Assembly: GCF_048593235.1 (NCBI RefSeq)
Contig: NC_133619.1
Span: 651,040,558-651,104,557, forward strand
Origin: Sminthopsis crassicaudata
Lineage: Eukaryota
Length of the DNA: 64,000 nt
Reading direction: 5' to 3'
This document shows positions 1,257 through 63,942 of this stretch, piece by piece (positions within the stretch are counted from its first letter, which is position 1; each line of letters begins with the position of its first letter). The notes beneath the pieces are model-generated. The model saw only the letters and a program-made list of their open reading frames with translations. It made no database searches and was not told where the DNA came from. The translations under genes and the position numbers were made by a program.

Positions 1257-4200
1257 ATGAGCCCTGCCCTCTCTATCCTGCTATGCCTTGGTGAGTCGTA
1301 AGAACCCCACAATGGAGGGGACCTTACAAAGCCCCAATTTCAGCCCGCCCAACCCCATTTTGTGGGGAGAAGTGGCCTGACAAGTCAGAGATCAGCCAAC
1401 AAGATGGGGGAGGGGGGAGCTGGAAGCCCGGGGGGTCCCTGAGCCAGCTCTGGCTCCTGTCTCCTTGCTCCGGGGGTGCTGGGCGGGGAGGGTGCGGGCG
1501 CTGACCCACAGTAATCAGGCTCCTCTCTGCCAGGGCTGTGTCTGGGCCACAGGATGAGGGTGCAGGCGGGTGAGTCCTTCCCCCCAGAGCAGACAGCTCC
1601 CCCGGGGAGGGAGGTGGGGGCGGTCTGGGCTGCACTGGCAGGGCTTGAAGGGGGGACCCGGTTTGGGGGGGCCCAGAGCAGGGGGATCCCCTGGAGCTGA
1701 CAGCTCTCATTCCCTTCCAGGCCCGCTTCCCAGACCCTCCCTCAGGGCAGAGAATGGGCCACTAGGGCCCCTAGGGAGAAGGGTGAGCTTCAGGTGCCGG
1801 GGGTCACCGGGGATTGCTGAATACCTTCTAGAGAAAAAGCTGGGACGTGAATTAAAAGTTATAGACTACATGCTGTCAGAGGAAGCTGAGGTCAACTTTT
1901 CCATCCCAAAGATGACACTGAAAGATGCAGGAATCTACTTCTGCCACTATAGAACAGCTTCGCACTGGTCAGAGCGCAGTAACTTCCTAGAGCTGGTGGT
2001 CACAGGTGAGGAAGTCCAGGTCCCTCTGCCCCTCAGGCAGGGCCGGCGCAGGGTCCCAGAGGCCCCTGAACTTCTCCCCAGCCCAGCCTGGTCCCAAGCT
2101 GCCGTCTGACCCTGCCCTTCTGCCCTTTCCCTTGTTCCTGCCTCTGCTCTGCCTCTGGGCTAGAAGTGGGGGAAGGGAATCAGCATTTATGGCAGCACCT
2201 ACTGTGTGCCAAACATTTTGCATTATTATGCCATGAGAGCCTCATAATAACTCTGCCAGCTGAATGCTATCCCATCTTACAGGTGGGGAAACTGAGGTGA
2301 ACAGAGAGGAAGTGACTAGTTTAGGATCATCTTGCTGGAAAATGTCTGAGGCTGGATTTGAACTCAGGATCTTCATGACTCCAGGCCAGGGCTTTAGCCT
2401 CTGGGTCTCCAGCTCCCTCAATCAGCTCCTATTTGGGGGCATTGTGGAGGCAGGAGGCTCAGCTTGGGGCTCAGGAGCCCAAATAGAGCTGTTGGTTGCC
2501 TGGGGAGGAGGCACGGGGCTGATGGGTCCTTTCCCCCTCTCAGCCCTGACCCTCTCAAGCCAGAGGAGGGGCCTGGTGCTGCTCTGTGCCCTCCCACAGC
2601 TCAGACCTGGGCACAGGGAGGGGAGGGGGTGTCACCTCTGGGTAGCTCCAGGGTCTCTTTGGGACTTCAGGTAGGAGGGAACTGGGAATCCCAGCCAAGC
2701 CTCTTATTGTCCATCCCAGGCACCTGCCCAGGGTCCACAGTGAGAGCAGCCTCTGCTTGGGGGTCATAGCCCAGCCCCCTTCCAGGGAGGAAGCCTCCCG
2801 GACCATGGTTCCTTCCCCAGAACTGACCCAAATTTGTGTCTGTCTCTGAATGTCCCTGTCCCTTGTCTTTCTCTTGGTGTCTTTTTCCGTCTGTCTTTCT
2901 TTGCTCCTCCCTCTCCCCCATCTCTTCCTCTCTTCCTCCCTCACTCTCTCTGTCTCTCCCCCTCCTCTCTCTCTCTCTGTCTCTCCCCCACTCTCTTTCC
3001 TTCTCTCTCTTCCTGCCCTCAGGCTTTTTCCCTCCCCCTACTCAAGCACCCACTTTCCTCTCTTCCCCCAGAGGTTTCCAAGGCACTTTTTTTACCCAAA
3101 ACCCTACAATATTTGTATTATTCTGGATGTGAGTTGAATCTCCAACCCATCCTGGGGTCCAGGCAGGCCTAGGCCACCTCCTAGCAGTAAGGATCTGCCC
3201 CCCCCAAAAAATAGAAGCCTTACAGCCCTAACTCCAGCCCCTCCCCCCAGAGCGGTACCACCCGCCCTCCCTCTCAGCCTGGCCCGGCTCCACGGTGGCC
3301 GAAGGACAGAACGTGAGCCTCCAGTGCCGGGCCGAGAAGGGATATGACCGCTCTGCCCTGTACAAGGACGGAGAACAAGTCACCAAAACCACGGCCCAGC
3401 TCCAAGGACGGGGCTCTCAGGCCAGTTTCCTCATCCCTGCTGTAACTTCTGCCCACGGAGGGACTTACCGATGCTTCAGCTTTCAGAGTCGCTCCCCCCA
3501 TGAGTGGTCATTCCCCAGTGACCCCCTGGAGCTCAGGGTCACAGGTGAGAGACCCCGGCCCTCCCCCTTCCTCCCAGCCCTTGTAAGCTTCCTCCCTGGT
3601 CCTGGGGCACCAGGCTGCCTGCTCAGAGCACTGCCCTAGGGGCCCCCAGGGGCCAGCAGGGCTGGGGGGGGGTGAAGCACAGAAGGAGGGCACAAAGGAT
3701 CTGGGCAATGGTTGGGGCTCAGAGAAGGCAGGCCCTGGGGCCTCTGCTCCATGGCCCGTCTGGACTCCTCCCCCTTAGCGGCCAGTCCAGTTACCCACAC
3801 ACAGATAAGCTCTCTCCAGGTCCCAGGAAAGGGGTTGAGGAGGGCAGAGAAGGGGTGAGTCAGTGGGGGAGAGTAATACCCACAAGCCCTTCTTTGTTTC
3901 AGGAAACTCAAAGGATCCTCCCCTCCCCCACAGCCCTGGAGACACCCAAGCTCTGACAGCCTCCCCACCCAGTGAGTAACCAGGCATCCTCAGCACAGGG
4001 GGGGAGTCCCTCTCCCCTCTTCCTCTCCTGCTGTTGCTGCCTAAGCCAAGGCTCCCTCCTGTCTCTGAGAATGAGGAGGGATGGAGGGCTGGGACACAGC
4101 CAGGAGGAACTTCAATTGGGGAAGGAGGAAGATCCCGGCCAGCCAGGAAGGGGGCTGGGGAGGGCGGAGCAGAGATGGGGGAGGCAGCCCCAAGTCTGCT

Positions 4201-12675: not shown

Positions 12676-12693
12676 TAGTTTCCTGACGGGATC
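12676..12693 (+). promoter_or_regulatory. Degenerate primer binding site complementary to the tRNA-Glu 3' end
   Basis: LTR-CA, then tt, then tagtttcctgacgggatc, vs the expected TGGTTCCCTGACCGGGAATC. Confidence 0.65.
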
Positions 12694-15600: not shown

Positions 15601-16950
15601 TTGGTTTTCTTTTACCTCTCTCACCTGAACTAAAAAAAAACCTGAGACTCCCAGCTCTTTTCTTCTCAGGACAACTTCTGCCTCCTGAAAAGACACTCAG
15701 AATGGAGGTACCTTTTTAATGCAAATCTCTCCCATTCTTAGGTCGGGAACCCCAAAGTTTGTGCTGTAGGTGCCAAGGAAACTGTCCAAGGAGACCCCAG
15801 TCCCTGCCCTGAGTTTGAGCAGGAGGAGCACTGGAGGAACTGCCTTTCTACCACAACAGCGAACACCACAGAGGTTGAACTGCCCCACCCCCAGCATCCT
15901 GCTCTTGGGTAGGAATTTGGGATCTGTCCCTGTTTCCCCTTTTATCCATCGGGACAGCCCAAACACCTCAGGGGTCGGTAAGCTGGGTAGGCAGTGCTGC
16001 TACTTTGCACTTCTTCTGTCCCCTTCTACCCCTCCCCCATAAAGAGTGGGGATAGTGGGGGGGAAGGCTCAGGATCTTTATTTAACCATTTTGGTGATTT
16101 TTCTGGTGAGATTGAGGAACCAACTCTATTTTTTTTTTAAACTGCACAGACAGTTAAGGGATTTCTAAAAGCTTAAACTGCATTCTTATCTTGATCTGTG
16201 GCCATGACAAGTGGGGACACACCCATCCCTGGACCATGCCTCACAAAAAGATGAGTGGCTGTTTTTAATCAAAAGACTCTTAATCAAAGAGGTCTAAAAA
16301 TTAACTCTGGGATAGCCATTAACCCCAGGGATTCGGAGCATTAAAAAAAAAAAAAGGCCTATGGACATCAGTGGCTTATTAAACCTAATAGATATCAAGG
16401 CCTCCTGCCTAGCCTGACTCTCTGATTCACACCCTTGATCCCTGCCACCCTGACCCAACCCCGAAAAAAATTAGCTTTCCTGGAACTTGGAGCGAAAGGG
16501 CTAACCTCTGCTCCTAGCATTTTCTCTCATACTTTTCTCTGGCATTTGATATTGATAGATGGGCCATCATCATTCTTTTTTTTTTTTTTTAATTTTTTAT
16601 TTTATTTTATAATTATAACATTTCTTGACAGTACATATGCATGGGTAATTTTTTACAACATTATCCCTTGCACTTACCTCTATTCAGATTATTTTCCTTC
16701 CTCCCCCAACCCCCTCCCCCAGATGGCAAGCAGTCCCACACATGTTAAATATATTACAGTATAATCTAGATACAATATATGTGTGTAGAACCGAATTTTT
16801 TGTTGCACAGGAAGAATTGGATTCAGAAGGTAAAAATAACAGTTTACATTCATTTCCCAGTGTTCCTTTTCCGGATGTAGCTGGTTCTGTCCATCATTAA
16901 TCAATTGGAATTGGATTAGTTCTTCTCTATGTTGAAGAAATCCACTTCCA

Positions 16951-19900
16951 TCAGCATACATCCTCGTACAGTATCATTGTTGAAGTGTATAATGATCTTC
17001 TGGTTCTGCTCGTTTCACTCAGCATCAGTTGATGTAAGTCTCTCCAAGCCTCTCTGTATTTCTCCTGTTGGTCATTTCTTATAGAACAATAATATTCCAT
17101 AACATTCATATACCATAGTTTACCCAACCATTCTCCAATTGATGGACATCCATTCATCTTCCAGCTTCTAGCCACTATGAAAAGGGCTGCCACAAACATT
17201 TTGGCACATACAGGACCCTTTCCCTTCTCTAGTAGTTCCTTGGGGTATAAGCCCAGTAGTAGTATAGCTGGGTCAAAGGGTATGCACATTTTGATAACTT
17301 TTTGGCATTATTCCAGATTGCTCTCCAGAATGGTTGGATTCTTTCACAACTCCACCAACAATGCATCAGTGTCCCAGTTTTCCCACAGCCCCTCCAACAT
17401 TCATCATTATTTGTTCCTGTCATCTTAGCCAATCTGACAGGTGTGTAATGATACCTCAGAGTTGTCTTAATTTGCATTTCTCTGATCAATAGTGATTTGG
17501 AACACTCTTTCATATGAGTGGAAATAGTTTTAATTTCATCATCTGAAAATTGTCTGTTCATATCCTTTGACCATTTATCAATTGGAGAATGGCTTGATTT
17601 CTTATAAATTAAAGTCAATTCTCTGTATATTTTGGAGATGAGGCCTTTATCAGAACCTTTAACTGTAAAAATGTTTTCCCAATTTGTTACTTCCCTTCTA
17701 ATCTTGTTTGCATTAGTTTTGTTTGTGCAGAAACTTTTTAATTTGGTGTAATCAAAATGTTCTATTTTGTGATCAATAATGGTCTCTAGTTCTCCCTTGG
17801 ACACAAACTCCTTCCTCCTCCATAAGTCTGAGAGGTAAACCATCCCATGTTCCTCCAATTTATTTATGATTTCGTTCTTTATGCCTAAATCTTGGACCCA
17901 TTTTGATCTAATCTTAGTATGTGGTGTTAAATGTGGGTCCAGGCCTAGTTTCTGCCATACTAATTTCCAGTTTTCCCAGCAGTTTTTGTCAAATAATGAA
18001 TTCTTATCCCAAAATTTGGGATCTTTGGGTTTGTCAAAGATTAGATTGCTATTTTTATTCGCTATCTTGTCCTGTGAACCTAACCTATGCCACTGATCAA
18101 CTAGTCTATTTCTTAGCCAATACCAAATGGTTTTGGTGACTGTTGCTTTATAATATAGCTTTAAATCAGGTACACTTAGACCACCTTCCTCTGACTTTTT
18201 TTTCATTAGTTCCCTTGCAATTCTCGACCTTTTATTCTTCCATATGAATTTTGTTGTTATTTTTTCTAGGTCATTAAAATAGTTTCTTGGGAGTCTGATT
18301 GGTATAGCACTAAATAAATAGATTAGTTTGGGGAGTATTGTCATCTTTATTATATTCGCTCGGCCTATCCAAGAACACCGAATGTCTTTCCAATTATTTA
18401 AATCTGACTTTATTTTTGTGGCAAGTGTTTTGTAATTTTGCTCATATAATTCCTGACTCTCCTTTGGTAGATATATTCCCAAATATTTGATACTATCGAC
18501 TGTTATTTTGAATGGAATTTCTCTTTGTATCTCTGCTGTTGGATTGTGTTGGTAATGTATAAAAATGCTGAGGATTTATGTGGATTTATTTTGTATCCTG
18601 CGACTTTGCTAAAATTCTGAATTATTTCTAATAGCTTTTTAGCAGAGTCTTTGGGGTTCTCTAAGTATACCATCATGTCATCTGCAAAAAGTGACAATTT
18701 GATTTCTTCATTTCCTACTCTAATTCCTTGGATCTCTTTCTCGGCTCTTATTGCCAAGGCTAGAGTTTCTAGTACTATATTGAATAGTAATGGTGATAGT
18801 GGGCAACCTTGTTTCACTCCTGATCTTACAGGGAAAGGTTCTAGTTTATCACCATTACATATGATGTTTACTGAAGGTTTTAAATATATGCTCCTTATTA
18901 TTTTAAGGAATAGTCCATTTATTCCTATACTTTCAAGTGTTTTTAGTAGGAATGGATGTTGGATTTTATCAAATGCCTTTTCTGCATCTATTGAGATGAT
19001 CATATGGTTTTTATTAATTTGATTATTAATATGGTCAATTATACTAATAGTTTTCCTAATATTAAACCAGCCCTGCATTCCTGGTATAAATCCCACTTGG
19101 TCATAGTGTATTATCCTGGGGATGATTTTCTGAAGTCTATTTGCTAATATCTTATTTAAGATTTTAGCATCAATATTCATTAAGGAAATTGGTCTATAGT
19201 TTTCTTTCTCAGTTTTCGATCTACCTGGTTTAGGTATCAGTACCATGTCTGTGTCATAGAAGGAATTTGGTAGGACTCCTTCAATCCCTATTTTTTCAAA
19301 TAGTTTACATAGCATTGGAGTTAGTTGTTCTTTAAATGTTTGGTAGAATTCACCTGTAAATCCATCTGGTCCTGGGGACTTTTTCTTAGGAAGTTGGTTA
19401 ATAGCTTGGTCTATTTCTTTGTCTGAGATGGGACTATTTAGACTACTTACTTCCTCCTCTGTTAATCTGGGCAAGCTATATTTTTGAAGGTATTCTTCCA
19501 TTTCATTTAAGTTATCGAATTTATCGGCATAAAGTTGAGCAAAGTAGCTCCTAACTATTGTTCTAATTTCCTCTTCATTAGTGGTGAGTTCACCCTTTTC
19601 ATTTTCAAGACTATCAATTTGCTTTTTCTCTTTCCTTTTTTTAATCAGGTTTACTAAGGGTTTGTCTATTTTGTTGGTTTTTTCATAAAACCAACTCTTA
19701 GTTTTATTAATTAATTCAATAGTTTTTTTACTTTCAATTTTATTAATCTCACCTTTTATTTTTTGAATTTCAAGTTTTGTGTTTGTCTGGGGGTTTTTAA
19801 TTTGTTCCTTTTCTAGCAATTTTAGTTGTAAACCCAATTCGTTGGCCCTCTCTTTCTCTATTTTATGCAGGTAGGCCTGTAGAGATATAAAACTTCCCCT

Positions 19901-20782
19901 AATTACTGCTTTGGCTGTATCCCACACATTTTGGTATGATGTCTCATTATTGTCATTTTCTTGGGTGAAGTTATTAATTATGTCTATGATTTGCTGTTTT
20001 ACCCAATCATTCTTTAGTATAAGATTATTTAGTTTCCAATTATTTTTTGGTCTATTTTCCCCTGGCTTTTTATTAAATCTTATTTTGATTGCATTATGGT
20101 CTGAAAAGGATGCATTTACTATTTCTGCCTTACTGCATTTGATTTTGAGGTTTTTATGCCCTAGTATATGATCAATTTTTGTATAGGTTCCATGAACAGC
20201 TGAGAAGAAAGTATATTCCTTTCTGTCTCCATTTAGCTTTCGCCAAAGATCTATCATATCAAACTTTTCTAGTATTCTATTTACCTCTTTGACTTCTTTC
20301 TTATTTATTTTGTGGTTTGATTTATCTAATTCTGAGAGTGCAAGGTTGAGATCTCCCGCTATTATAGTTTTGCTATCTATTTCCTCTTGCAGCTCTCTTA
20401 ATTTCTCTTTTAAGAATTTAGATGCTGCACCACTTGGTGCATACATGTTTAATATTGATACTGCTTCACTATTGATGCTTCCCTTTAGCAGGATATAATG
20501 CCCTTCCTTATCTCTTTTAATTAGATCAATTTTTGTTTTTGCTTGATCTGAGATGAGGATGGCTACTCCTGCTTTTTTGGTTTTGCCTGAAGCATAATAG
20601 ATTCTGCTCCACCCTTTTACTTTTAGTTTGAATGTCTCATCCTGTTTCAGGTGTGTTTCCTGTAAACAACATATAGTAGGATTCTGACTTTTAATCCAGT
20701 CTGCTAACTGCTTCCTCTTTATGAGGCAGTTTGCCCCATTCACATTTATGGTTAGAAGGACTAATTCTATATTGCTTGCCAT
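16951..20782 (-). pseudogene. L1 ORF2p (EN-RT-Cys domain) broken by two single-base frameshifts
   Basis: ORF pieces 18503-20782 (EN; RT FADDM), 17229-18482 and 16951-17289. Frameshifts near 18532 and 17305 relative to the homologous text in the 8.2-10.3 kb and 34-35.6 kb copies. Confidence 0.92.
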
Positions 20783-21237
20783 CCTACTAACCCCTGCTTA
20801 TGCTTTTCCCCTTTCCTTCCCTTTTACCCTCCTATCCAGTATTAAACTGGTGAACACCACTTGCTTTTCACAGCCCTCCCTTTTTAGGATCCCTCCCCCA
20901 CCTTAAAGATCCTCCCCTTATTTTACCCCTTTTCCTCGAAATTACTGTATTCCCTTCCCCTTAGCTTACTCCTTCCCTTTCACTTTTCAATGAAGTGGAA
21001 GAAGTTTCACCATAAATCGAATATGTCTATTGATACACGCTATGTTCATCTCCCTCCTTTCTTTTTCTCAGATATAATAGGTTACCTTTGCCTCTTCATG
21101 AGATGTAGTACCACCACTTTATACTTTTTTATGATATAATCTCCTTTCCACCTCTAGTTTCTAAGACAAATTGTACATATGTTCTTTACATATTTTTTTG
21201 ACAGAAGTATAGTTCTCAAGATTTCTTTTTACCTTTT

Positions 21238-22413
21238 TTAGAAGTCTCTTGAGTTCTGTATTTGAAGATCAAACCTCTTATGTAGGTCTGGTTTTTTCAT
21301 CAAAAATAGATGGAATTCATTTATTTCGTTAAATGTCCATCTTCTTCCCTGGAAAACGATGCTCATTCTTGCTGGGTAAGTTATTCTTGGCTGCATACCA
21401 AGTTCCTTAGCCTTTCGGAATATCATGTTCCAGGCCCTGCGTTCTTTTAATGTGGATGCTGCTAGATCCTGTGTTATCCTTATTGTGGATCCTCCATATC
21501 TGAATTGTTTTTTTCTAGCAGCTTCCAATATCTTTTCCTTTGTCTGATGGTTCTTGAACTTGGCCACTATATTTCTTGGCGTTTTGATTTTAGGGTCCCT
21601 TTCAGTAGGTGATCGATGAATTTTCTCAATGTCTATTTTACCCTCTGTTTCCAAAACGTCTGGGCAGTTCTCTTTGATAATTTCCTCGAAAATGGTGTCC
21701 AAGCTCTTTTTTTCCTCCCATTTTTCAGGGAGTCCGATTATTCTCAAATTGTCTCTCCTGGATCTGTTTTCCAGGTCTGTTGTCTTTCTGGTAAGGTACT
21801 TGACAGTCTTTTCAATTGTTTCATTTCTCTGGTTTTGCTTGACTCCCTCTTGGTTTCTCCTTGAGTCATTCATTTCTACTTGTTCCAGTCTAATTTTCAA
21901 TGATGTATTTTCTTCACTCACTTTTTTTATATCTCTTTGTAATTGTCCAATTGAGTTTTTATCTTCTATGGAATTTTTTTCCATTTTATCCATTTTATTT
22001 TTTAGAGAGCTGATTTCTTTTTCCAGCTCTCTAATCCTGTTTTCCTTGGAGTAGTTTACCTTTTCCAGCTCACTAATCCTGTTTTCCTTGGAGTTGTTTA
22101 CCTTTTCCAGCTCACTAATCTTGTTTCTCAAGGATTTGATTTCTTTATCCACTCTGTCTTTGAATGCATGGGATGACTTCTCCAGGCTCTCTTGCCAAGC
22201 TTCCCTTTCTTTTTCCCATTTCTCTTCCAGCTCTCTTGTGAGAGCCTTTTTGATTTCCTCTATGAGGTTCTTTTGTACTGAGGAGCAGCTTATATCCCTC
22301 CCAGGGGATACATCTGGGGACATTCTGTTCCTAGTCTCCTCAGCATTTGAAGTCTGCTCCCTCTCCACACAGAAGCTGTCAATGGTTAGAGCCCTTTTGA
22401 ATTTTTTGTTCAT
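21238..22413 (-). CDS. L1 ORF1p, uninterrupted 391 aa
   Basis: Coiled coil, RRM start RSRRDNLRIIGLPE, and C-terminal domain ERRAWNMIFRKAKELG. Confidence 0.9.
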   Translation of the reverse strand: MNKKFKRALTIDSFCVEREQTSNAEETRNRMSPDVSPGRDISCSSVQKNLIEEIKKALTRELEEKWEKEREAWQESLEKSSHAFKDRVDKEIKSLRNKISELEKVNNSKENRISELEKVNYSKENRIRELEKEISSLKNKMDKMEKNSIEDKNSIGQLQRDIKKVSEENTSLKIRLEQVEMNDSRRNQEGVKQNQRNETIEKTVKYLTRKTTDLENRSRRDNLRIIGLPEKWEEKKSLDTIFEEIIKENCPDVLETEGKIDIEKIHRSPTERDPKIKTPRNIVAKFKNHQTKEKILEAARKKQFRYGGSTIRITQDLAASTLKERRAWNMIFRKAKELGMQPRITYPARMSIVFQGRRWTFNEINEFHLFLMKKPDLHKRFDLQIQNSRDF

Positions 22414-24416
22414 TTTGTCAGAGTAGGAATCAAAGAAAACAAACTGACAAGAGAAACAATTGGTCTGTTTTGCGGGGGATAGGGCTGGATGTTATTAATG
22501 GGCTTCCTCTACAGACTGGGGGTAGGGCAGCAGAGAGCCACTAACAGAACAGCAATGACTGTACTGATTCTGAGCTCTGAGGCTCTGAGAACGCACCGAG
22601 TCAGTCCAGGTGGGGGTTGGGGGTGGCCGGGCTCTGAGAGACGCTGGCTTTCTGGGGTTTTAATCTTCACCTCCGGTGTTTACACCCTCTCTGCTGCTCC
22701 TGGCTTGCTGCCAAGATGGAGCATCCACACTGGGGCAAAAGCCCTTTCACAGAAACGGCAGAGATCACACCCCTCCCCCTCCGGTCTGAGCTGTGTGAGC
22801 TGCCTGTCTTGCTCTGGCTGTCTGCCCTCAGTCTGCGCCCAGTCTGATTGACCCTCCCCCAAACAAACGCAGACCTTTTCTGGCGACTCTCAAGGATGTC
22901 TTCTCTTGGTGATAATTTGTGGATTTCTTTCTGGGTCAAGCATTAAGTCAGAGGCTTGTCATGAAGTAAGTTCTGAGAGAAAACGAGGAGCTCAAGCAGC
23001 TGTCTGCCTCCACGCCGCCATCTTGGCCGGAAGTCTCATCATTCTTACAGGCAGCCCACAGAAGGGACCTGATGCATTTCCTCCTAAAGACCCCATTCCC
23101 AAATGTCGCCATCTCCACCCTGGAGGACACCCCACTTTTAATCTGTTCCTGAGATCTTTTCTCTGAGCTTCAAACTTTGCATTCTCAACTGCCCTTCAGC
23201 CTGGAGAACTGGGGACGACTGACTGGGACAAAGAGCCCTTAGATGCCCTGCTGCCATTCCAGACCCCACACCTCACACTTTACCTCCTGGCATGAACCCC
23301 CAAATCTCTACGAACCTTGTCAGCTTGAAGCAGCTACATGAATTTGAGATCTTCGTCCTTTTTCCCTTAAATGAATTTAAGTTTTAACTGCTTGTGAGGG
23401 GAATGAAGCAGGTTGTGGTCCCTTCAAGAAAATGTATTTCCTATTGATTTGTGACTCCTTTCAGATTCCCAGCCCCTCCTGGCTGAGGCATATCCTCCGC
23501 AGACAAGTTGTCTTCCTGGGATGCCAGAGCCTTTGATTCACAAATCCTGGTCAAAAGCCTCCCTTTTATTCCAATATATGAAGTGGGCTTGTCCCAGCCC
23601 CCACTGGTTCTGATCTCTTCGGGCTTCCCAACCTCCACCAAGGCAACCAATAAAACACTTCCATCAACTAAAGTCTGTGCAGATGAGCTCGGCAGCTCCC
23701 TTTGCTGCCAGGACCTTCTGCCCACTGAGAACTGCATTCTCAGTGCAAAATTCCATTTTCCATAGATCTGCCCCCTGGAATAATATTCTCTTCCAGTGCC
23801 ATCCTCTCCTTATCCTCGCCTATTTCCCTAACCAGACTTTATGCCTCTCTGTCAGGATTTCTAGCCTTACTTCCAATCCCTGTAATAAGCCTCTTTTAGC
23901 AATCTAGGTTTTGGGGTCGGAAATTCCTTTACAGAGAAACTCCGTGCCACCAGAAGGGGGAGTCCCCAAAACTCCCTACCCTTGCACCGAATCCCAAAGG
24001 GGGCAGGGGAGCTAAACCTCTCCATTTGGTTCCCTGGACCCCAAACCTTCCACTAGAACTTATCATTTAACTCCCTGACCACTAGAAACCCTAATTTCAT
24101 TTGGGCTCCCTAAATCTAAACCTCATCACTTGGCCATCTTTCCCAGGTTCTGGAGCCAGAATTAGCACCAAAAAAGCAAGAATTACTCTGTCTGTCACAA
24201 GTTGACTGCCCCACCCCTCCCCCACAGCATGGGGCCAACAAGGTAGCAGCATCCACAAAGAGGAAGGGGAAGTGAAGCTCCCCAAATTCTGGGGAATACA
24301 GCTGGAGGCCAAGGAGAAACAGCCCCTCAGAGGGAACCTCAGAGCAGAGCCAGCCTTGCTCACCTCCTGTGCCTTGGTCCAGGTCAGCCAGCAGCCCCCC
24401 TCCCACAAGGACCACC

Positions 24417-27400
24417 ATGAGCCCCGCCCTCTCTGCCCTGCTGTGCCTTGGTGAGTCCTAAGAACCCCCACAATGGAGGGGACTTTACAGAGCCCCAATT
24501 TCAGCCCACCCCACCGCCATTTTGTAAGGGGAAAGAGGCCAGCAAGATGGGGAGGCGGAGGAGCTAGAGGCCCGGGGGGTCCCTGAGCCGGCTCTGTCTC
24601 CTTGCTCTGGGGTGCTGGGCGGGGAGGGTGCGGGTGCTGACCCACAGTAATCAGGCTCCTCTCTGCCAGGACTGTGTCTGGGCCACAGGATGAGGGCGCA
24701 GGTGGGTGAGTCCTTCCCCCCAGAGCAGACAGCTCCCCCAGGGAGGGAGGTGGGGGCGGTCTGGGCTGCACTGCAGGGCTTGAAGGGGGGACCCGGTTTG
24801 GGGGGGCCCAGAGCAAGGGGATCCCCTGGAGCTGACAGCTCTCATTCCCTTCCAGACGAGCTCCCCAGACCCTCCCTCAGGGCAGAGAATGGCTCACTGA
24901 GCCCCCTAGGGAGAAGAGTGACCTTCAGGTGCCGGGGGTCACAGGGGGCTGCTGAATACGTTCTGGAGAAAGAGCTGGGACGTGAATTAAAACCTATCAC
25001 CTACGTGCTGTCAGAGGAAGCTGAGGTCGAGTTTTCCATCCCACGGATGACACTGAATGACGCAGGGAACTACTCCTGCAGCTACAGAACAGCATCCCGC
25101 TGGTCAGAGCGCAGTGACCCCCTGGAGCTGGTGGTCACAGGTGAGGAAGCCCAGGTCCCTCTGCCTCAGGCAGGGCTGGCGCAGGGTCCTGGCAGCCCCT
25201 GAGCTCCTCCCCAGCCCAGCCGGGTCCCAAGCTGCCCTCTGACCCTGCCCTTCCCTCCTCCACCCTGCCCCTGCCTCTGCTCTGCCCTGGGGCTAGAAGT
25301 GGGGAAAGGGAAGCAGCATTTATACAGCACCTACTGTATGCCAAGCAGTTTACATTATAATGCCATGAGAGCCTCTGTTATGGGCCAGAACTCTGAACTT
25401 GAAACAAAGGATGCTTCCAAGGTACTCAGTCAGTGGAATTGAGGAGACAATGGTTATCTGGTTTAGCAGGTTCAGAATGTTTGATTTAATCTTACAACAA
25501 ATAATGGCTTCCTCGTGATATAATGATTGGTTTATACTCCGTGTGGAGCATATAAGCAGGGACTCAGGAAGTCCTCAGGTGCAGAGATGAGAAAAGACAA
25601 GAGAACTGGAGGCAGGAGTTCAAGCTCTCAGAACCAAGGAGAGAGTCATCGTCTTCAGTCAGGCTCCTGGGGGCCTGAGACACTCGGGTTCAGGGAAGAC
25701 AGGCGGACTGGAGGCTGAAGCGCAAGCCCTTGGACTCAGGTTCATTCATCCCATCGCACGCCATCCTGCTGGCAGGCTCTCCTTGGCTTCTCCACTGAAA
25801 CCAAGGCTCCCAAAGGAAAGCCTCGCTAAGAAAGCTGCCCCACTGGGCTCAGACACTTACCACTTCCTGGCTGTGTGACCCTGGGCAAGTCACTTACCCC
25901 AGCCTCAGGAAAAAAAGAAAGAAAAGAAAAGAAAGCTGCCCCAGGGCCCCAGGAAAGGAAACTAGATTGTGAAGGAGATAATAAAGGATTTGGACTTTAA
26001 CACCGGGCTGTGCTTGTGGTGATTACTGAACTGAAGCAAAGGCTGCTCCCAGAGACCCCAGGAAAACCGAACCAGACAGCATTACAATGCTCACAATAAC
26101 TCCGCCAGCTGAATGCTATCCCACCTTGCATGTGGGAAAACTGAGGTGACCAGAGAGGAAGTGACTAGCCCAGGATCATCTTGTTGGAAAGTGTCGGAGG
26201 CTGGATTTGAACTCCTGAGTCCAGGCCACGGCTTTGGCCTCTGCGCCCCCAGCTGCCTCAATTAGATCCCACTTTGGGACAAAATGGAGGCAGGAGGTTC
26301 AGCTTAGGACTCAGGAGTCTAGACAGAGCTGTGGCTCCCTGGGAATGAAACAAGGGGCTGGTGGGCCATCTCCCCCTCCCAGCTCTGACCCTCTCAAGCC
26401 AGAGGGGAGTAGAGGGGCCTGCTGCTGCTCTGTGCCCTCCCCCCACTCAGACCTGGGCACAGGTTCTTCTGGGTAGCTCTAGGGTCTCTGTGGGACGGAC
26501 GGCAGGATAGAAGGGAACCGGGAATCCCAGCCAAGCCTCTTATTGTCCGTCCCAGGCACCTGCCCAGGGTCCACAGTGAGAGCAGCCTCTGCTTTGGGGG
26601 CGATGGCCAGCCCACACGGGTCGTACCCGGCCATAACTCTGCCCCCGCGGGACACCCAGCCCCTCAGTGGAGGGATTCTGTGAGAGAGGCCAGCCCCCTG
26701 CCAGGGAGGAAGCCTCTGGACCATGGCTCCTTCCTTGGAACTGACCCAAATTGTCTCTCTCTGTCTCTGAATCTGTCTCTCTTCCCTGCCTCCTGTCTTT
26801 CTCTCGGTGACTTTTTCAGTCTGTTAGACACTCTCTGCATTTCCCTCCCTTCCTCCCTTTCTCTCTGTCTCTCCCCCCTCCTCCCTCTCTCTCTCTCTCC
26901 CCCTCCTCCCTCTCTGTCTCTCCCCCCTCCTCCCTCTCTATCTGTCTCTCCCCCCTCCTCCCTCTCTCTCTGTCTCTCCCCGCTCCTCCCTCCCTCTCTA
27001 CCTGTCTCTCCCCCCTCCTCCCTCTGTCTCTCCCCCCTCCTCCCTCTCTACCTGTCTCTCCCCCCTCCTCCCTCTCTCTCTCTCTCCCCGCTCCTCCCTC
27101 CCTCTCTACCTGTCTCTCCCCCCTCCTCCTTCTCTCTCTGTCTCTCCCCCCTCCTCCCTGTCTGTCTCTCCCCCCTCCTCCCTCTCTACCTGTCTCTCCC
27201 CCCCCTCCTCCCTCTCTAGCTGTCTCTCCCCCCTCCTCCCTCTCTGTCGGCCTCTCCCCCTCCTCCATCCCTCTCTTTCTCCCCCCTCCTCCCTCCCTCT
27301 CTTTCTCCCCCCTCCTCCCTCCCTCTCTACCTGTCTCTCCCCCCTCCTCCCTCTCTCTCTGTCTCTCCCCCCTCCTCCCTCTCTCTCTGTCTGCCTCTCC

Positions 27401-29686
27401 CCCTCCTCCCTCCTCTCTGTCTCTCCCCACTCCTCCCTCTCTCTCTGTCTCTCCCCCCTCCTCCCTCTCTCTCTGTCTGCCTCTCCCCCTCCTCCCTCCT
27501 CTCTNNNNNNNNNNNNNNNNNNNNNNNNNNNNNNNNNNNNNNNNNNNNNNNNNNNNNNNNNNNNNNNNNNNNNNNNNNNNNNNNNNNNNNNNNNNNNNNN
27601 NNNNNNNNNNNNNNNNNNNNNNNNNNNNNNNNNNNNNNNNNNNNNNNNNNNNNNNNNNNNNNNNNNNNNNNNNNNNNNNNNNNNNNNNNNNNNNNNNNNN
27701 NNNNNNNNNNNNNNNNNNNNNNNNNNNNNNNNNNNNCTCTCTGTCTCTCCCCACTCCTCCCTCTCTCTCTGTCTCTCCCCCCTCCTCCCTCCCTCTCTCT
27801 CTGTCTCTCCCCCCTCCTCCCTCTCTGTCTCTCCCCTTCCTCCCTCTCTGTCTCTCCCCCCTCCTCCCTCTCTCTCTGCCTCTCCCCCTCCTCCCTCCCC
27901 TCTGTCTCTCCCCCACTCTCTTTCCTTCTCTCTCTTCCTGCCCTCCGGCTTTTTCCCTCCCACTATTCAAGCACCCACTTTCTTTTCTTCCCCCAGAGGT
28001 TTCCAAGGCCTTTTTTTACCCAAAAACCTCTAATATTTGTTTATTCTGGACGTGAGTTGAATCTCCAGCCCATCCTGGGGTCCAGGCAAGCCCAGGCCAG
28101 CCTCCGGCGGCCAGATCTGCCCCCACAGAAAAGGGGCTTTACAGCCCTAACTTCAGCCCCTCCCCCCCCCCAGAGCTGTACCACCCCCCCTCCCTCTCAG
28201 CCTGGCCCGGCTCCACGGTGGCCGAAGGACAGAACGTGAGCCTCCAGTGCCGGGCCGAGAAGGGATATGACCGCTCTGCCCTGTACAAGGACGGAGCACC
28301 GGTCACCCAGGCCTCGGCCCAGCCCCATGGACGGGGCTCTCAGGCCAATGTCTCCATCCCTGCTGTGACCTCTGCCCACGGAGGGACGTACCGCTGCTAC
28401 AGCTTTCAGAGCCACGCCCCCCATGAGTGGTCAGCCCCCAGTGACCCCCTGGAGCTCAGGGTCACAGGTGAGAGACCCCGCCCCCTTCCTCCCAGCCCTC
28501 CTAAGCTCCCTCCCTAGTCCGGGCACCTCGCTGCCTGCTCAGGGCCCTGTCCCAGGGGTCCCCGGGGGCCAGAAGGACTGGGGGGTGAGCTTCAGAGCAG
28601 GCAGGGTCTGAGTAATGGGTAGGGCTCAGACAATGCAGACCCTCGGGCCTCTGCTCCCTGGCCCTCTAGCCTCCCTCACCATCTCCCACCGCCCACTTCT
28701 GCTGGTCCCCCATATGTCTCCTGGGTCCCAGGTAAGGGGTTCAGGAGAGAGGAGCAGAACTGGGGTATAGCCAGAGGGTAAATACCCACAAGCCCCTCAC
28801 CCTTTCCCTCTCCCTGTACCGGACACCTCCAGCACCCTGGGAATCCCCAGCTCTGACCCCCTCCCCACCAGCGAGGAGGGGTGGGAGTCTCTGATCCTCT
28901 CCTGCTCCTGCTGCCTAAGCCAGGGCTGAGTCTCCCCCCTGTGTGGGAGCAGGGGGAGGGACGGAGAGCTGGGACAGGCAGGAGGAACTCCAAGCCAGGG
29001 AAGGAGGAGCATGGCTGGCCTGGGAGGGGGCTGGACATGTGGGAGCAGAGATGGGCAGGGCGGCCCCAATTCTGCTCCCTTCTCTCTCTTCCCCATTCCT
29101 CCCGGGGGCCCCCACCCCTCCCCCATGCAGCCATAGCAGGGACTATGGGGAGGGGGCTCTGCTTCTGCATCCCTGGCGTGGCCAGGCTCACACAGAGAGG
29201 AAGTGTCTGAGGTGGGATGGGAACTCGCCTCTTCCTCACCACAAGCTCTACCCACTCCCCAAGCTGTTGCCAACATGGTGGGAGATGAAGAATGAGGGGG
29301 AGGAGAGGAAGTGAGGGCCAGGGGGATCTGGGCCTGACTCAGGGGCCTGCAGAGGAAGCCCTGAGGGGGAGCAATAGGGGAAGGAAGCTGCCTGAGCCCC
29401 TCCCTCAGCCCCATCCCCAGGCTCCCAGCCCAGGGAGAGGGGCTGGGGCTGAGCCTGGGGAGAGCTGAGGAATCCTGCCCCCACTGACGGGGGCCTGAGA
29501 TCTGGGGGTCTTGTCCCTCTCCCAGTGACTTCTCTCCTCCTCCCAGATCCTGCAGCCCAGGATTACACGGTGGGCAACGTCATCCGCCTCAGTCTGGCCG
29601 GGCTGGTGCTCATCCTCCTGGGGGTCCTGCTGGCTGAAGTCTGGAATAGCTGCAGGGAACCCAGGGGGAGCTCCTGCACCTTCTGA
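24417..29686 (+). CDS. Receptor B: activating two-Ig LRC-family receptor, paralogue of A, about 262 aa
   Basis: Exons 24417-24450 (Kozak accaccATG), 24670-24705, 24856-25140, 28174-28467 and 29547-29686. GT-AG, 789 nt open. [31 protein letters not shown] with Arg. Intron 3 contains an assembly gap. Confidence 0.87.
25376..26086 (+). mobile_element. Solo LTR in receptor B intron 3
   Basis: TG...CA termini, TATA-like catataag near 25547, AATAAA 25980-25985. Empty site in receptor A at about 2240 (gagagcctc ataataac). Imperfect 6-bp TSD agcctc/atgctc. Confidence 0.85.
25843..25928 (+). mobile_element. 5'-truncated marsupial SINE (WSINE1-like) inside the solo LTR
   Basis: ctggctgtgtgaccctgggcaagtcactta core, A-rich tail, exact 15-bp TSD aagaaagctgcccca (25828-25842, 25929-25943). 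Confidence 0.8.
26750..27930. repeat. Expanded CT-rich tandem repeat (ctgtctctcccccctcctccctct-like units) containing the assembly gap
   Basis: Many imperfect copies of about 24-30 nt. N-run at 27505-27736. The homologous tract in A is only about 150 bp. Confidence 0.92.
27505..27736. other. Assembly gap (232 N)
   Basis: Run of n characters inside the CT repeat. Confidence 1.
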
Positions 29687-37947: not shown

Positions 37948-40839
37948 ATGGCCCCCGCACACACTGCCCTGCTGGGCTTCGGTAAGTCCTGGGAAGTGGG
38001 AGAGCCATGATTCCAGAGGCAGCCTCAAAGCTAGACCTGCCTGGACCCTGCTCCGGGCCCAACAGAGCAGGAAAAGAAGGGCCAGTGAGAAGGGGCCCAG
38101 CCAGCACAGTAGCCGGGGTCCCCTGCTGCCTAAATGCCCCTTGAGTGTGGTGACAAACTTGGGGCTTCTGGGAGCCGAGTCTAATGACAGCCTGTCCTAC
38201 AGGGCTTTGTCTGTGCTGGGGGACCTGGGCACAACAGGGTGAGTCCTTGCCCCAGCTTCCTGCCCCTCCTGCCTGCTCAGCACTGAGAGCTGGGGGGGGG
38301 ACAGGGAAGGGGATACAAGGGGAGGGGGTCTGTGCTGATGGATGATTCTGGGAGGGGGTGGGGGAGGGGCTGAGAGGGGATCTCAAGGCTGATTCTCTTC
38401 CAGACACATTGCCCAGACCCTCCCTCAGGGCTGAGCCAGGCTTGGTGGTCCCCCAAGGGAATCCTGTGAACCTCTGGTGTAAAGGACCCCCTGGAGCTGG
38501 TGTGTACCACCTGAGGAAGAGAGGAAGCAATAATTTTGTGGAAGTTTTTCCAGCTGGGCTGGAAGCCTGGTTCACCATCCCTGAAATGGCAGCAAACACT
38601 GCAGGGAGCTACCAGTGTGTCTACTACTACCAGTCACGGTGGTCAGAGCCCAGTGAGCCCCTGGAGCTGAGAGTGTCAGGTGAGGAGGCTCTGGAGCCCC
38701 TGCGCCCCCAACCCCAGCAGGCCCTGTGGAAGCCGGGACAGGGAGAGGGGGGTGGGCCGGCCGCTGCTCTGTCCCTGTGCCGGCTCCAGCCTGGGCCCAG
38801 AGAGGGGAGGCTCTTCCTGTTCTCAGTCCCGGCTCTCCTGCTCCACCAGGGCTTTTCCCGGCACCCTCCCTCTCAGCCTGGCCCAGCTCCACGGTGGCTC
38901 CAGGACAGGACGTGACCCTCCGGTGCCATTCCCTGCTGTTCTTTGACTGCTCGGCCCTGTACAAGGACGGAGCACCGGTCACCCAGGCCTCGGCCCAGCC
39001 CCATGGACGGGGCTCTCAGGCCAATTTCTCCATCCCTGCTGTGAATTCCACCCCCGGAGGGACGTACAGATGCTACAGCTTTCAGAGCTACACCTCCCAT
39101 GAATGGTCAGCCCCCAGTGACCCCCTGGAGCTCAGGGTCACAGGTGAGACCCCGCCCCCTTCCTCCCAGTCCTCCTAAGCTCCCTCCCTGGTCCTGGGGC
39201 ACCCCTGTTTGAAGGGTCCCAGGACACATCAGGGAGGGCCGGGGCACCCAGAGGCCTGAGGGTGGGCAGGGCCTGGCCAGGTGTCTACTGCAGGGACTCT
39301 GCAGTGCAGAGGGAGGGGGCAGAAGTCTGCTTCTTTCTAACCATTCCCACCTCATGCTTATACTCCCATTGTACAGATGGGAAAGTGAGGCCCAGAGAGG
39401 GGAGGGACTTGCCCAGCACCCCAGAGGGTGAGCCAGGCAGAGCTTGTCCTGGGAACGTGAATCACAGAGGGCCCCGAAGGGCTCCCCTTGCGGGATGGAC
39501 AGCCGGGCTCTAGCTTTTCCCTCTTCCCTGACCGCATCCTTACCCCCCCTTCTCCCACCTCTGGACTTTTGCCCGAGCTGTGCTTGGCATATTTTCCTTA
39601 TTCACTCCCCTCTAAGGTTCACCTCCTACAAAATGTCTTTCCTGAAATCCCCGTTAATCCCTCATCATGTGACAGTTTTACAGATGAGTAAACTGAGGTA
39701 AAGTGCCAGTGACCCCTTCCCAGGGTCACACAGCTAGCAAGTGTCTGAGGCTGGACTGGACTCAGCTCCAAGTTCAGGGTGCGTGGCGCCGGCTGAGTGC
39801 TCCTGAAGGCTCCTCTCCCCTCCTCCCTCCCTTTGGGGAGGGGTCCAGGCTGGGCCTGCGCACCCCTACTGGCCTTCCTTCCCCACGGCGCCCCCACCCC
39901 TGGGCGCCAGCTGAGCACTTCAGTGCTTGCCTCCTGTCTCCCGCCTGCCTGGAGGGGAGAGGAGCCAGCAGGACCTCCGGGCCGGACCACCCAGACCAGG
40001 CCAGGCTCTGGAGTGCGCAGGGCTCGAGTGGCCGGCTCTGGGCCTCCCGGGGACCAGGCGGCCTTAATCTGCGCCCCCCCCCAGCTTCAGCCCCAGCTTC
40101 CTCGGGTCTCACGGCAAGCATCTTGCTGGGGGTCTCAGCGGTGCTCCTCCTCCTCCTCCTCCTCCTCCGCCGCCGCCATCGGGCCAGAATCAGTGAGTTC
40201 TTGGGGCTGGGGGCAGCCGGGCGGAGGGCCTGCACCCCAGGGAAGGCTGACCCCGACTCTCCCCACAGGCAAAGGGAGCAGAGAGGTCAAGAAGACCCTC
40301 AAGAGGTAGGAGCCCAAGATAGACCCGCCCCCACCGCCCCGCCCCCCTTCCCAGACCCTCCCCCACCGCCCCCCACCTTCCCAGACGCCCTCACTCTGCC
40401 TTCTTGTTCCCCAGCTCAGACCCGGCTGCGACCCCCATGGAGGAGAGACTGTGTGAGTGGGGGCAGGGCGGGAGGGGCTGGGGGGTCTGAGGGAAAGGCT
40501 GGGCCTGGGCGGAGCCGGGGTCCTGACCCCCCTCCCCCCCCCTCTGCCTCCAGACGCTGCTGTGGGGGATGGCAGACAGACAGAGGAGGCCAGACAGGAC
40601 GACACTGCCGTGAGTCTCTCAGCTGGGGGGGGGGAGGGGCGGCTTCCCAGGCTCACACGCAGCCGGGGGTCAGGGGTCAGGGTCCTCCCCCTGCTCAGCC
40701 CCCCCTCCCCTCCGGCCAGGCTCCCACCGGGGAAGACCCTCAGCAAGTGACCTACGCGCAGCTGAAGCTCGAGGCCGGGGCCGCGGACCCTCCGCGCTCT
40801 GGCCCAGCGGCGCCCAGCCTCTACGCGGCCCTGCGCTGA
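37948..40839 (+). CDS. Receptor C: inhibitory two-Ig LRC-family (LILRB-like) ITIM receptor, about 332 aa
   Basis: Exons 37948-37981, 38203-38238, 38404-38679, 38850-39143, 40085-40192 (uncharged TM then RRRHR), 40269-40305, 40415-40452, 40554-40609 and 40720-40839. Phases consistent, 999 nt open. Motifs RLYAAV, VTYAQL, SLYAAL. AATAAA 41173-41178. Confidence 0.88.

Positions 40840-62145: not shown

Positions 62146-63942
<1,797 letters not shown>

What the first reader, a model, noticed from the sequence alone, without database searches (positions are those of the whole stretch)
28174..28530. Receptor B D2 exon is a mosaic: identical to A for 108 nt, then identical to inhibitory C for 72 nt
By hand alignment, B 28188-28295 equals A 3265-3372 exactly, where C differs at about 20 positions. 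B 28278-28349 equals C 38954-39025 exactly, where A differs at 10 positions. The switch lies in an 18-nt block shared by all three (GCCCTGTACAAGGACGGA). B-C similarity continues about 60 nt into the following intron, so it is not only protein convergence. A-B D1 exons differ at about 42 of 285 nt, so 108 identical nt is not expected from uniform divergence. Inference: interlocus gene conversion is keeping part of an activating ectodomain matched to the inhibitory one, as known for LILRA6/LILRB3, PIR-A/B and paired Siglecs.
Basis: partly seen in the sequence, partly recalled or inferred. Interest (0 to 1): 0.78.

Follow-up and report, generated by a model that had tools for sequence, protein, structure and literature searches.

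The report
Three-donor mosaic exon in dunnart immune receptor
One exon of a fat-tailed dunnart immune-receptor gene is stitched from pieces copied from three sister genes, a clear but ordinary case of the gene-to-gene copying (gene conversion) long known in this kind of receptor cluster.

Summary
B 28188-28295 equals A 3265-3372, and the match in fact runs 109 nt. B 28278-28349 equals C 38954-39025. The A and B D1 exons differ at 42 of 285 nt.

The window is fat-tailed dunnart (Sminthopsis crassicaudata) leukocyte-receptor-cluster DNA; C is the annotated 'platelet glycoprotein VI-like' gene.

The mosaic is statistically strong. Breakpoints fall at 28277/28297 (P<5e-5) and at 28342/28350 (P about 9e-4).

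Exact contigs from public runs of two samples cross the junction, so it is not an assembly chimera.

Related dasyurids show that both sequence types are old, so A did not simply diverge alone.

D1 trees keep the C lineage apart (100/100). D2 trees group genes by species, and an AU test rejects a C-lineage clade (p=0.004).

Best reading: recurrent short-tract interlocus gene conversion shuffles D2 cassettes across the family. The idea that this 'keeps an activating receptor matched to an inhibitory one' is only partly supported, because D1 is not shared, the direction of B-C transfer is unresolved, and B may not be expressed.

This is a new member of a known kind.

The parts
28174..28467 (+). 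Receptor B D2 (membrane-proximal Ig) exon, 294 nt, phase 1, open frame, canonical AG/GT splice sites: the mosaic exon
   Evidence: Pfam Ig_2/Ig_3; AlphaFold model with pLDDT 94.7 and an Ig fold
28188..28296 (+). Tract exactly identical to A 3265-3373 (109 nt). It encodes strands A to C and is sequence type I ('VAEGQ...[10 protein letters not shown]')
   Evidence: permutation P<5e-5; in the segment tree it groups with A, next to Antechinus L003a/b (99% for the type I/type II split); a Logan contig covers 28188-28296 exactly
28278..28295 (+). 18-nt block that is near-invariant across the family (encodes ALYKDG, end of strand C). The A-like to C-like switch lies somewhere inside it
28278..28349 (+). 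Tract exactly identical to C 38954-39025 (72 nt). It encodes the C' strand and the C'-E region and is sequence type II. It includes a CCG (Pro) codon seen only in B and C among the 10 sequences compared
   Evidence: (P=8e-4)
28343..28732 (+). Tract about 98.5% identical to paralogue L001 (gene of P0001, same chromosome, about 650.8 Mb), with exact runs of 130 and 92 nt. It covers the E-F-G strands and 265 nt of intron. Flanking B-L001 identity is about 72% upstream and 50-80% downstream
   Evidence: MaxChi break at 28342/28350, P=9e-4; segment tree B+L001 93%
3251..3544 (+). Receptor A D2 exon. It is type I in both halves and is the likely donor of the 109-nt tract (3265-3373)
38850..39143 (+). 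Receptor C D2 exon. Its translation is 100% identical to XP_074164191.1 (P0050). It is the partner of the 72-nt tract (38954-39025)
38862..39203 (+). The only stretch of the C locus that aligns well to the A/B/L001 genes (about 87%). It starts 13 nt into the exon and ends about 60 nt into the intron: the footprint of exchange confined to D2
24856..25140 (+). Receptor B D1 exon. It is 94-97% identical to L001/L002 in its 3' two-thirds (about 89-92% at the 5' end) and 86-89% to A
1721..2005 (+). Receptor A D1 exon (42 of 285 nt differ from B)
38404..38679 (+). Receptor C D1 exon, a deeply divergent lineage (about 34-38% amino-acid identity to the A/B D1 exons in local tblastn alignments). Its orthologue in the Tasmanian devil is P0102
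29546..29686 (+). B transmembrane/tail exon with the NxxR motif (NVIR) typical of FcR-gamma-coupled activating receptors. The tail is frameshifted relative to A and L001
5618..5791 (+). A transmembrane/tail exon with the NVIR motif
40084..40839 (+). C uncharged transmembrane exon (40084-40224) and cytoplasmic exons carrying the ITIM-like motifs VTYAQL and SLYAAL: the inhibitory type
26831..27935 (+). CT-rich 28-nt minisatellite in B's D1-D2 intron. It contains the N run 27505-27736, with the same repeat on both sides of the gap. It ends 240 nt upstream of the mosaic exon

Best explanation
Receptor B's D2 exon is a patchwork made by short-tract non-allelic (interlocus) gene conversion among paralogous two-Ig-domain leukocyte-receptor-cluster genes of the fat-tailed dunnart. 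These are the marsupial 'M1M2/MAIR' type, annotated as LILRA5-like or GPVI-like. Two old D2 sequence types exist in dasyurids, type I and type II. B carries a type-I copy of A over strands A to C (109 nt, exact). It then carries a type-II stretch identical to inhibitory gene C over the C' strand (72 nt). The rest of the exon and 265 nt of intron are near-identical to a third paralogue, L001. The likely mechanism is repair of a DNA break in one gene using a misaligned paralogue as template. Copied tracts would be about 50-400 bp, and their ends fall in blocks that are identical in all copies, here the 18-nt ALYKDG block. Shown here: the mosaic itself, its statistical significance, its presence in reads of two samples, and concerted evolution of D2 but not D1. 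Inferred: the break-repair mechanism, the direction A to B, and whether B and C exchanged directly or through an unsampled copy. The net effect is shuffling of surface-exposed cassettes within species. It is not demonstrably selection for matching an inhibitory partner.
For: Exact identities and their rank among all matches. GENECONV-like permutation tests and maximum chi-square breakpoints. Segment trees: segment 1 has A=B with the Antechinus type-I genes (99); segment 2 has B=C inside type II (93 against A plus type I); segment 3 has B with L001 (93). The window is S. crassicaudata, since the C exons translate 100% to XP_074164191.1, so L001 and L002 are same-species paralogues. Along 6 kb, B's closest relative switches repeatedly among A, L001 and L002. 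C aligns to the A/B family only at 38862-39203. D1 protein tree: C lineage 100/100. D2 protein tree: dunnart C sits with the dunnart paralogues (89/93), and the AU test rejects a C-lineage clade at p=0.004. Logan contigs with 0 mismatches cover 28267-28330/31 (X4, X5; sample S2) and 28275-41 (X1; sample S1), combining A-type letters at 28270/28275 with C-type letters from 28297 on.
Against: Only 5 paralogous D2 exons of this species were available (A, B, C, L001 and the split L002 exon), yet marsupial clusters hold 100 or more such exons (PMC6557307). A better donor for either tract may therefore exist. In 28296-28349 all A-versus-B/C differences change the amino acid, so synonymous sites alone do not separate conversion from selection there; the case rests on codon identity, the type phylogeny and the intron. 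One of the two read samples may be the assembly's own source. No long read was examined. An assembly gap lies 440 nt upstream.
Confidence: 0.85

Rival explanations
1. Selected 'paired-receptor matching', the first reader's reading: conversion is retained because it keeps activating B recognising the same thing as inhibitory C.
For: C is ITIM-bearing and B has an NxxR transmembrane segment. D2 evolves in concert between the C lineage and activating genes in both dunnart and devil. The devil C orthologue P0102 and activating P0011 share a near-identical stretch of about 55 residues in D2.
Against: The D1 domains of B and C are only about 34-38% identical in local tblastn alignments. The shared tract is 18 residues of the membrane-proximal domain. 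The largest exact tract links two activating genes. An inhibitory gene with an A/B-like D1 (P0008) exists elsewhere and is the more natural partner. B has a 12-kb insertion about 290 bp upstream of its ATG and a frameshifted tail, and no annotated protein was found for it.
Confidence: 0.25
2. B is a hybrid gene made by unequal crossing-over inside the D2 exon between an A-like and an L001-like gene, followed by minor changes.
For: B's intron upstream of D2 is closer to A (80-94%) and the intron downstream is closer to L001 (98-99%). The break coincides in both comparisons at 28277-28297.
Against: Upstream of the exon A-B identity is only 80-94%, not about 100% as expected just beside a recent crossover. 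B's D1 exon is closer to L001/L002 (94-97% over most of it) than to A (86-89%). B-L001 identity collapses again after 28740. The 28296-28342 stretch matches C and not L001. At least four switches are needed, so a single crossover does not suffice.
Confidence: 0.12
3. No exchange occurred: B and C keep an ancestral state in 28296-28349 and only A diverged, or the proteins converged under selection.
For: All 8 codon differences between A and B/C in that stretch are non-synonymous. The type-II state is widespread.
Against: A's state is shared with Antechinus L003a/b (93% split), so it is not a private divergence. B is type I immediately upstream, so it combines two old types. B and C share a CCG codon seen in no other sequence. 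B-C divergence is 10% and 22% in the flanking segments but 0 of 54 here (P=8e-4). The similarity continues into the intron.
Confidence: 0.05
4. Assembly artefact: a chimeric or collapsed consensus of A-like and C-like reads near the gap.
For: The N run 27505-27736 lies 440 nt upstream, in a minisatellite. Contig depth over the exon is 3-5 times that of the upstream flank.
Against: Exact contigs span the junction in runs from two samples and two studies. A contig matches the 109-nt tract to the base. No loose ends or joints were reported at the junction. The gap is flanked by the same repeat on both sides.
Confidence: 0.03

Closest known systems
KIR2DS4 as a product of gene conversion with KIR3DL2 (PMC2768862), and KIR domain shuffling in general
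   Same: Same gene superfamily (leukocyte receptor cluster Ig receptors). A short tract from an inhibitory gene is copied into an activating gene's Ig-domain exon and changes surface residues.
   Different: In KIR2DS4 the tract changes a proven HLA-binding site and has a shown functional effect. Here no ligand is known, the tract lies in the membrane-proximal domain, and three donors contribute to one exon.
LILRB3/LILRA6 patchwork variation (PMC3894450)
   Same: An inhibitory and an activating gene share variable positions, including synonymous ones, in a patchwork attributed to genetic transfer. LILRA6 and LILRB3 are the best PDB sequence matches of the B D2 domain.
   Different: LILRB3 and LILRA6 share the whole four-domain ectodomain. 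Dunnart B and C share only D2. The dunnart evidence comes from one assembly plus k-mers, not from population data.
Siglec-11/16 and CEACAM paired-receptor co-evolution by gene conversion (PMC5701461, PMC2832619)
   Same: Concerted evolution within species of extracellular exons between receptors of opposite signalling type, repeated independently in different lineages.
   Different: In those families the ligand-binding N-terminal domain is the part homogenised. Here the N-terminal D1 is excluded.
Marsupial LRC 'MAIR' M1M2 genes (Belov 2007; Guselnikov and Taranin 2019, PMC6557307)
   Same: Two-domain M1M2 architecture, an NxxR transmembrane segment, a massive lineage-specific expansion, and a neighbourhood containing Cnot3/Leng1/Tmc4. 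That paper invokes 'extensive exon shuffling'.
   Different: The paper does not use the term 'gene conversion' and works at whole-exon level in opossum and devil. The sub-exon tracts and the dunnart genes are not described there.

Membership tests
Interlocus (non-allelic) gene conversion tract | Mosaic phylogenetic signal with statistically significant breakpoints | tested here: met
   Permutation P<5e-5, 8e-4 and 4.5e-4; MaxChi P<5e-5 and 9e-4; discordant segment trees
Interlocus (non-allelic) gene conversion tract | A short patch bounded on both sides by normally diverged sequence, not a crossover | tested here: met
   A-B identity is 80-94% upstream and about 87% downstream of the 109-nt tract. 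B-L001 is about 72% before and 50-80% after the 98.5% tract. B-C does not align outside 28167-28527
Interlocus (non-allelic) gene conversion tract | Identity extends to silent and non-coding sites | tested here: met
   All synonymous sites are identical in the 109-nt A=B tract. B-C similarity runs 57 nt into the intron. The B-L001 tract includes 265 nt of intron. Within 28296-28349 itself the silent sites are uninformative
Interlocus (non-allelic) gene conversion tract | Non-reciprocal transfer with an identifiable donor and direction | tested here: inconclusive
   A to B is favoured because A is type I in both halves, like the Antechinus type-I genes. The B-C direction is unresolved, and unsampled paralogues could be the donors
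Interlocus (non-allelic) gene conversion tract | Real in the organism, not an assembly artefact | tested here: met
   Zero-mismatch contigs across the junction in two samples and two studies. Long-read confirmation was not possible
LRC group-A receptors / marsupial M1M2 (MAIR) genes | Two LILR/KIR/GPVI-type Ig domains, one exon each | tested here: met
   Pfam Ig_2/Ig_3; PDB best hits are LILRA6, LILRB3, LILRB1, PIR-B, KIR and GPVI; exon structure; Ig fold with pLDDT 94.7
LRC group-A receptors / marsupial M1M2 (MAIR) genes | NxxR transmembrane motif in activating members; ITIMs with an uncharged transmembrane segment in inhibitory members | tested here: met
   NVIR in A and B. C has an uncharged transmembrane segment plus VTYAQL and SLYAAL
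LRC group-A receptors / marsupial M1M2 (MAIR) genes | Location in the LRC beside Cnot3/Leng1/Tmc4 | tested here: inconclusive
   Only a sub-threshold Pfam NOT2_3_5_C hit at 63128-63838(-) (23.2 bits against a cut-off of 27). It is consistent with the synteny described in PMC6557307
Classical paired activating/inhibitory receptors (matched ectodomains) | The ligand-binding ectodomain is highly similar between the two partners | tested here: not met
   B and C D1 are about 34-38% identical in local tblastn alignments; only D2 is similar, at 77%. The D1 tree separates the C lineage at 100/100
Classical paired activating/inhibitory receptors (matched ectodomains) | A shared ligand with opposite signalling | not testable with these tools
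   The signalling motifs are opposite, but no ligand data exist

The most novel reading that the evidence does not exclude
D2-only concerted evolution links a deeply divergent inhibitory lineage (C and devil P0102) to the activating genes independently in two dasyurid genera, while D1 stays untouched. This could mean the membrane-proximal domain is a selected shared module, for example a common cis-partner or stalk function, with conversion still going on in living dunnarts. The 28342 A/T variant seen in one sample would shorten the B=C tract and would then be a segregating tract boundary.
Probability: 0.2. Interest if true: 0.5.

Novelty: new member of a known kind. Interest (0 to 1): 0.35.

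Why it matters
This is a clean sub-exon example, with three donors in 550 bp, of how marsupial leukocyte-receptor genes diversify. Previous work described this family only at whole-exon 'shuffling' level, in opossum and devil. It shows that orthology and domain trees for these genes cannot be trusted at exon level. It also shows that the dunnart, a laboratory marsupial model, carries actively recombining activating and inhibitory receptor genes. It does not reveal a new mechanism.

Tried and rejected
(1) I first read L001 as the orthologue of B in another species, because of the 98-99% stretch. I dropped that reading when C's exons proved 100% identical to a S. crassicaudata RefSeq protein. 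L001 is a same-species paralogue, which makes it a third mosaic parent.

(2) The look-up of encoding contigs returned nothing for P0008, P0050, P0006 and P0102. I therefore had no DNA for the dunnart inhibitory partner P0008 or for the devil C orthologue, and that comparison is at protein level only.

(3) Copy number from contig depth was inconclusive. The exon is 3-5 times deeper than the upstream flank, and the bin 28301-28348 sums to about 2,365 in X4, but Logan depths are per-contig means and 81 pieces were not listed.

(4) Read laying showed no contigs at 28781-29400 in any run. The tool states that a filter can cause such holes, so I drew no inference.

(5) A D2-based word search for a better dunnart donor of the 72-nt tract found none among annotated proteins of 90-287 aa. 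Longer proteins and unannotated exons were not covered.

(6) I scanned the fetched Antechinus and devil loci for a C-type D1 exon and found none.

The N run was not filled. The large representative-protein search was not used.
Full report
**What is there**

The window holds three two-Ig-domain receptor genes on the + strand.
- A: D1 exon 1721-2005, D2 exon 3251-3544, transmembrane exon about 5618-5791.
- B: D1 24856-25140, D2 28174-28467, transmembrane exon about 29546-29686.
- C: D1 38404-38679, D2 38850-39143, transmembrane exon 40084-40224, cytoplasmic exons to 40839.

The D2 domains match Pfam Ig_2/Ig_3. In the PDB they match LILRA6, LILRB3, LILRB1, PIR-B, KIR and GPVI best. A and B have the NxxR (NVIR) transmembrane motif of FcR-gamma-coupled activating receptors. 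C has an uncharged transmembrane segment and the ITIM-like motifs VTYAQL and SLYAAL.

C's exons translate 100% to XP_074164191.1, 'platelet glycoprotein VI-like isoform X3' of Sminthopsis crassicaudata. The window is therefore fat-tailed dunnart, as earlier notes of this scan also say. A sub-threshold CNOT3-type hit at 63.1-63.8 kb fits the Cnot3/Leng1/Tmc4 border of the marsupial LRC described in PMC6557307. In that paper's terms these are 'M1M2' (MAIR) genes.

Exons were searched separately by reference.

**Checking the observation**

Every number in the finding is exact.
- B 28188-28295 equals A 3265-3372. The match in fact runs 109 nt, to 28296, and is the longest exact A-B match in the whole gene pair; the next is 70 nt.
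- B 28278-28349 equals C 38954-39025 (72 nt). The next longest B-C match is 46 nt.
- C differs at 20 of 90 sites in the first tract, and A differs at 10 of 54 sites in the second.
- The D1 exons of A and B differ at 42 of 285 nt.
- B-C similarity continues 57 nt into the intron and then stops.

**Is it more than chance?**

I permuted the 73 polymorphic sites of a four-sequence alignment (A, B, C, L001), in the manner of GENECONV. This gave P<5e-5 for the A-B run, 8e-4 for B-C and 4.5e-4 for B-L001. The other three pairs were not significant.

Maximum chi-square tests place a break between 28277 and 28297 (P<5e-5) and a second between 28342 and 28350 (P=9e-4).

**A third parent**

It is not. 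From 28343 to 28732 B is about 98.5% identical to L001, with exact runs of 130 and 92 nt. L001 is the gene of P0001 ('LOW QUALITY PROTEIN: LILRA5') at about 650.8 Mb of chromosome CM109183.1. B-L001 identity is about 72% just upstream of this tract and 50-80% just downstream.

Because the window is the same species, L001 is a paralogue and not an orthologue; my first reading of it was wrong and I corrected it.

Along the whole 6-kb gene, B's closest relative switches repeatedly among A, L001 and L002. Over most of the D1 exon, for example, B is 94-97% identical to L001/L002 but only 86-89% to A.

**Polarity, from other dasyurids**

I fetched D2 exons from Antechinus flavipes (L003, L004) and Sarcophilus harrisii (L005). 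They show two old sequence types.
- Type I ('VAEGQ...EQVTK...') is carried by A in both halves and by Antechinus L003a/b.
- Type II ('VAPGQ..HSQL..AQVTQ...') is carried by C, L001, L004 and L005.

Segment trees put B with A inside type I for 28188-28277 (99%), and with C inside type II for 28296-28349 (a 93% split from A plus L003). They put B with L001 for 28350-28527 (93%).

B and C also share a CCG (Pro) codon at 28299-28301 that none of the other sequences has.

A to B is the more likely direction for the 109-nt tract. The direction of the 72-nt tract is open, as is whether an unsampled copy mediated it.

**Assembly artefact?**

An N run (27505-27736) lies 440 nt upstream, inside a CT-rich 28-nt minisatellite that continues on both sides of the gap. 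It does not touch the exon.

Logan contigs of public runs from two samples in two studies cross the junction with zero mismatches.
- 28267-28330/31 in X4 and X5 (sample S2).
- 28275-28341 in X1 (sample S1).

These contigs combine the A/B-specific letters at 28270 and 28275 with the B/C-specific letters from 28297 on. One contig in X1 covers exactly 28188-28296.

One sample may be the assembly's own source, and no long reads were available. Depth over the exon is 3-5 times that of the upstream flank, which I could not interpret.

**Family-wide picture**

- D1 protein tree: dunnart C and its devil orthologue P0102 form a clade with 100/100 support, far from all A/B-like genes.
- D2 protein tree: dunnart C groups with the dunnart paralogues (89/93), and devil P0102 falls among the devil and Antechinus genes.
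- AU test: a C-lineage clade for D2 is rejected (p=0.004). I had named that group after inspecting the alignment.

At DNA level, C aligns to the A/B family only across 38862-39203. D2, but not D1, therefore evolves in concert within species, across inhibitory and activating genes, in two genera.

**Mechanism and meaning**

The AlphaFold model of B's D2 (pLDDT 94.7) places the three parts on the Ig fold as follows.
- The A-derived part covers strands A to C (residues 5-40).
- The C-identical part covers the C' strand and the C'-E region (residues 41-58).
- The L001-like part covers strands E, F and G.

All eight codon differences between A and B/C in the middle part change the amino acid, and the type-II version is more GC-rich (0.72 against 0.61).

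The most likely process is repeated short-tract non-allelic gene conversion, in which a break is repaired from a misaligned paralogue. The junctions would be hidden in blocks that are invariant across the family. This step is inferred, not shown.

Its visible outcome in B is a new combination of cassettes, not homogenisation with C. B and C do not share D1, so they are not a classical matched pair. An inhibitory gene with an A/B-like D1 (P0008) exists elsewhere in the genome.

B may also be poorly expressed or not expressed at all.
- A 12-kb LTR-flanked insertion with a nested L1 sits about 290 bp upstream of its ATG.
- Its cytoplasmic tail is frameshifted.
- The D1-based word search returned no annotated protein for it.

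**Comparison and verdict**

Gene conversion between activating and inhibitory Ig receptors is established in several families: KIR2DS4/KIR3DL2 (PMC2768862), LILRB3/LILRA6 (PMC3894450), Siglec-11/16 (PMC5701461) and the CEACAMs, including those of marsupials (PMC2832619).

The marsupial LRC is known to be hugely expanded and 'exon-shuffled' (PMC6557307). That paper does not use the term 'gene conversion', and I found no paper on the dunnart LRC.

This is a well-documented new instance of a known process.

Noticed in passing
window 12020-24131: A 12.1-kb insertion lies upstream of B. It is bounded by direct repeats of about 700 bp (12020-12676 and 23433-24131, 85% identical) and is absent from paralogue L001, which runs straight from the homologue of 12019 to that of 24131. 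Nested inside is an L1 on the minus strand with long open ORF1 and ORF2 frames (21238-22413 and 18503-20782; Pfam Transposase_22, Exo_endo_phos, RVT_1).
   Followed up: partly
L002:17491-17623 and L002:21154-21319: In dunnart paralogue L002 (gene of P0005, about 647.9 Mb) the D2 exon is split into a 5' half and a 3' half about 3.5 kb apart. The break falls close to the position where B switches from A-like to C-like. The annotated product is a truncated 138-aa protein, so this is a disrupted family member.
   Followed up: no
window 3424-3530 (A D2, 3' part): A's residues from GRGSQASF to HEWS (35 aa) are identical at protein level to the D2 of P0008, a dunnart inhibitory receptor encoded elsewhere. 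A too may therefore carry a tract shared with an inhibitory gene. No DNA was available for P0008.
   Followed up: partly
window 28342 and 28715: Sample S2 (runs X4 and X5) carries contigs with T at 28342 (the L001 state, about 18% of summed depth) and A at 28715. Sample S1 does not. This may be allelic variation at the edge of the B=C tract, or another paralogue.
   Followed up: no
window 27965-28780: Logan contig depth is 3-5 times higher over the D2 exon and the first 270 nt of intron than over the upstream flank. It sums to about 2,365 in X4 over 28301-28348, against a single flank contig of 64.5 in the same-sample run X5 (X4 itself has no contig on the flank). This hints that the segment, or its core, exists in more copies in the genome than the window shows.
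   Followed up: partly
window 29655: B's cytoplasmic tail is frameshifted relative to A and L001, so it ends after a different short tail. The transmembrane NVIR motif is intact.
   Followed up: no
window 38679-38850: C's D1-D2 intron is only about 170 bp, against about 1.2 kb in A and about 3 kb in B. It shares no similarity with the A or B introns.
   Followed up: no
window 63128-63838 (-): A sub-threshold Pfam NOT2/NOT3/NOT5 C-terminal hit suggests that the last exons of CNOT3 lie here. The GC-rich stretch 48-62 kb (65-69% GC) probably holds the neighbouring LENG1/TMC4-type genes. The other nine ORFs scanned (eight of them here, one at C's cytoplasmic end) had no Pfam hit.
   Followed up: partly
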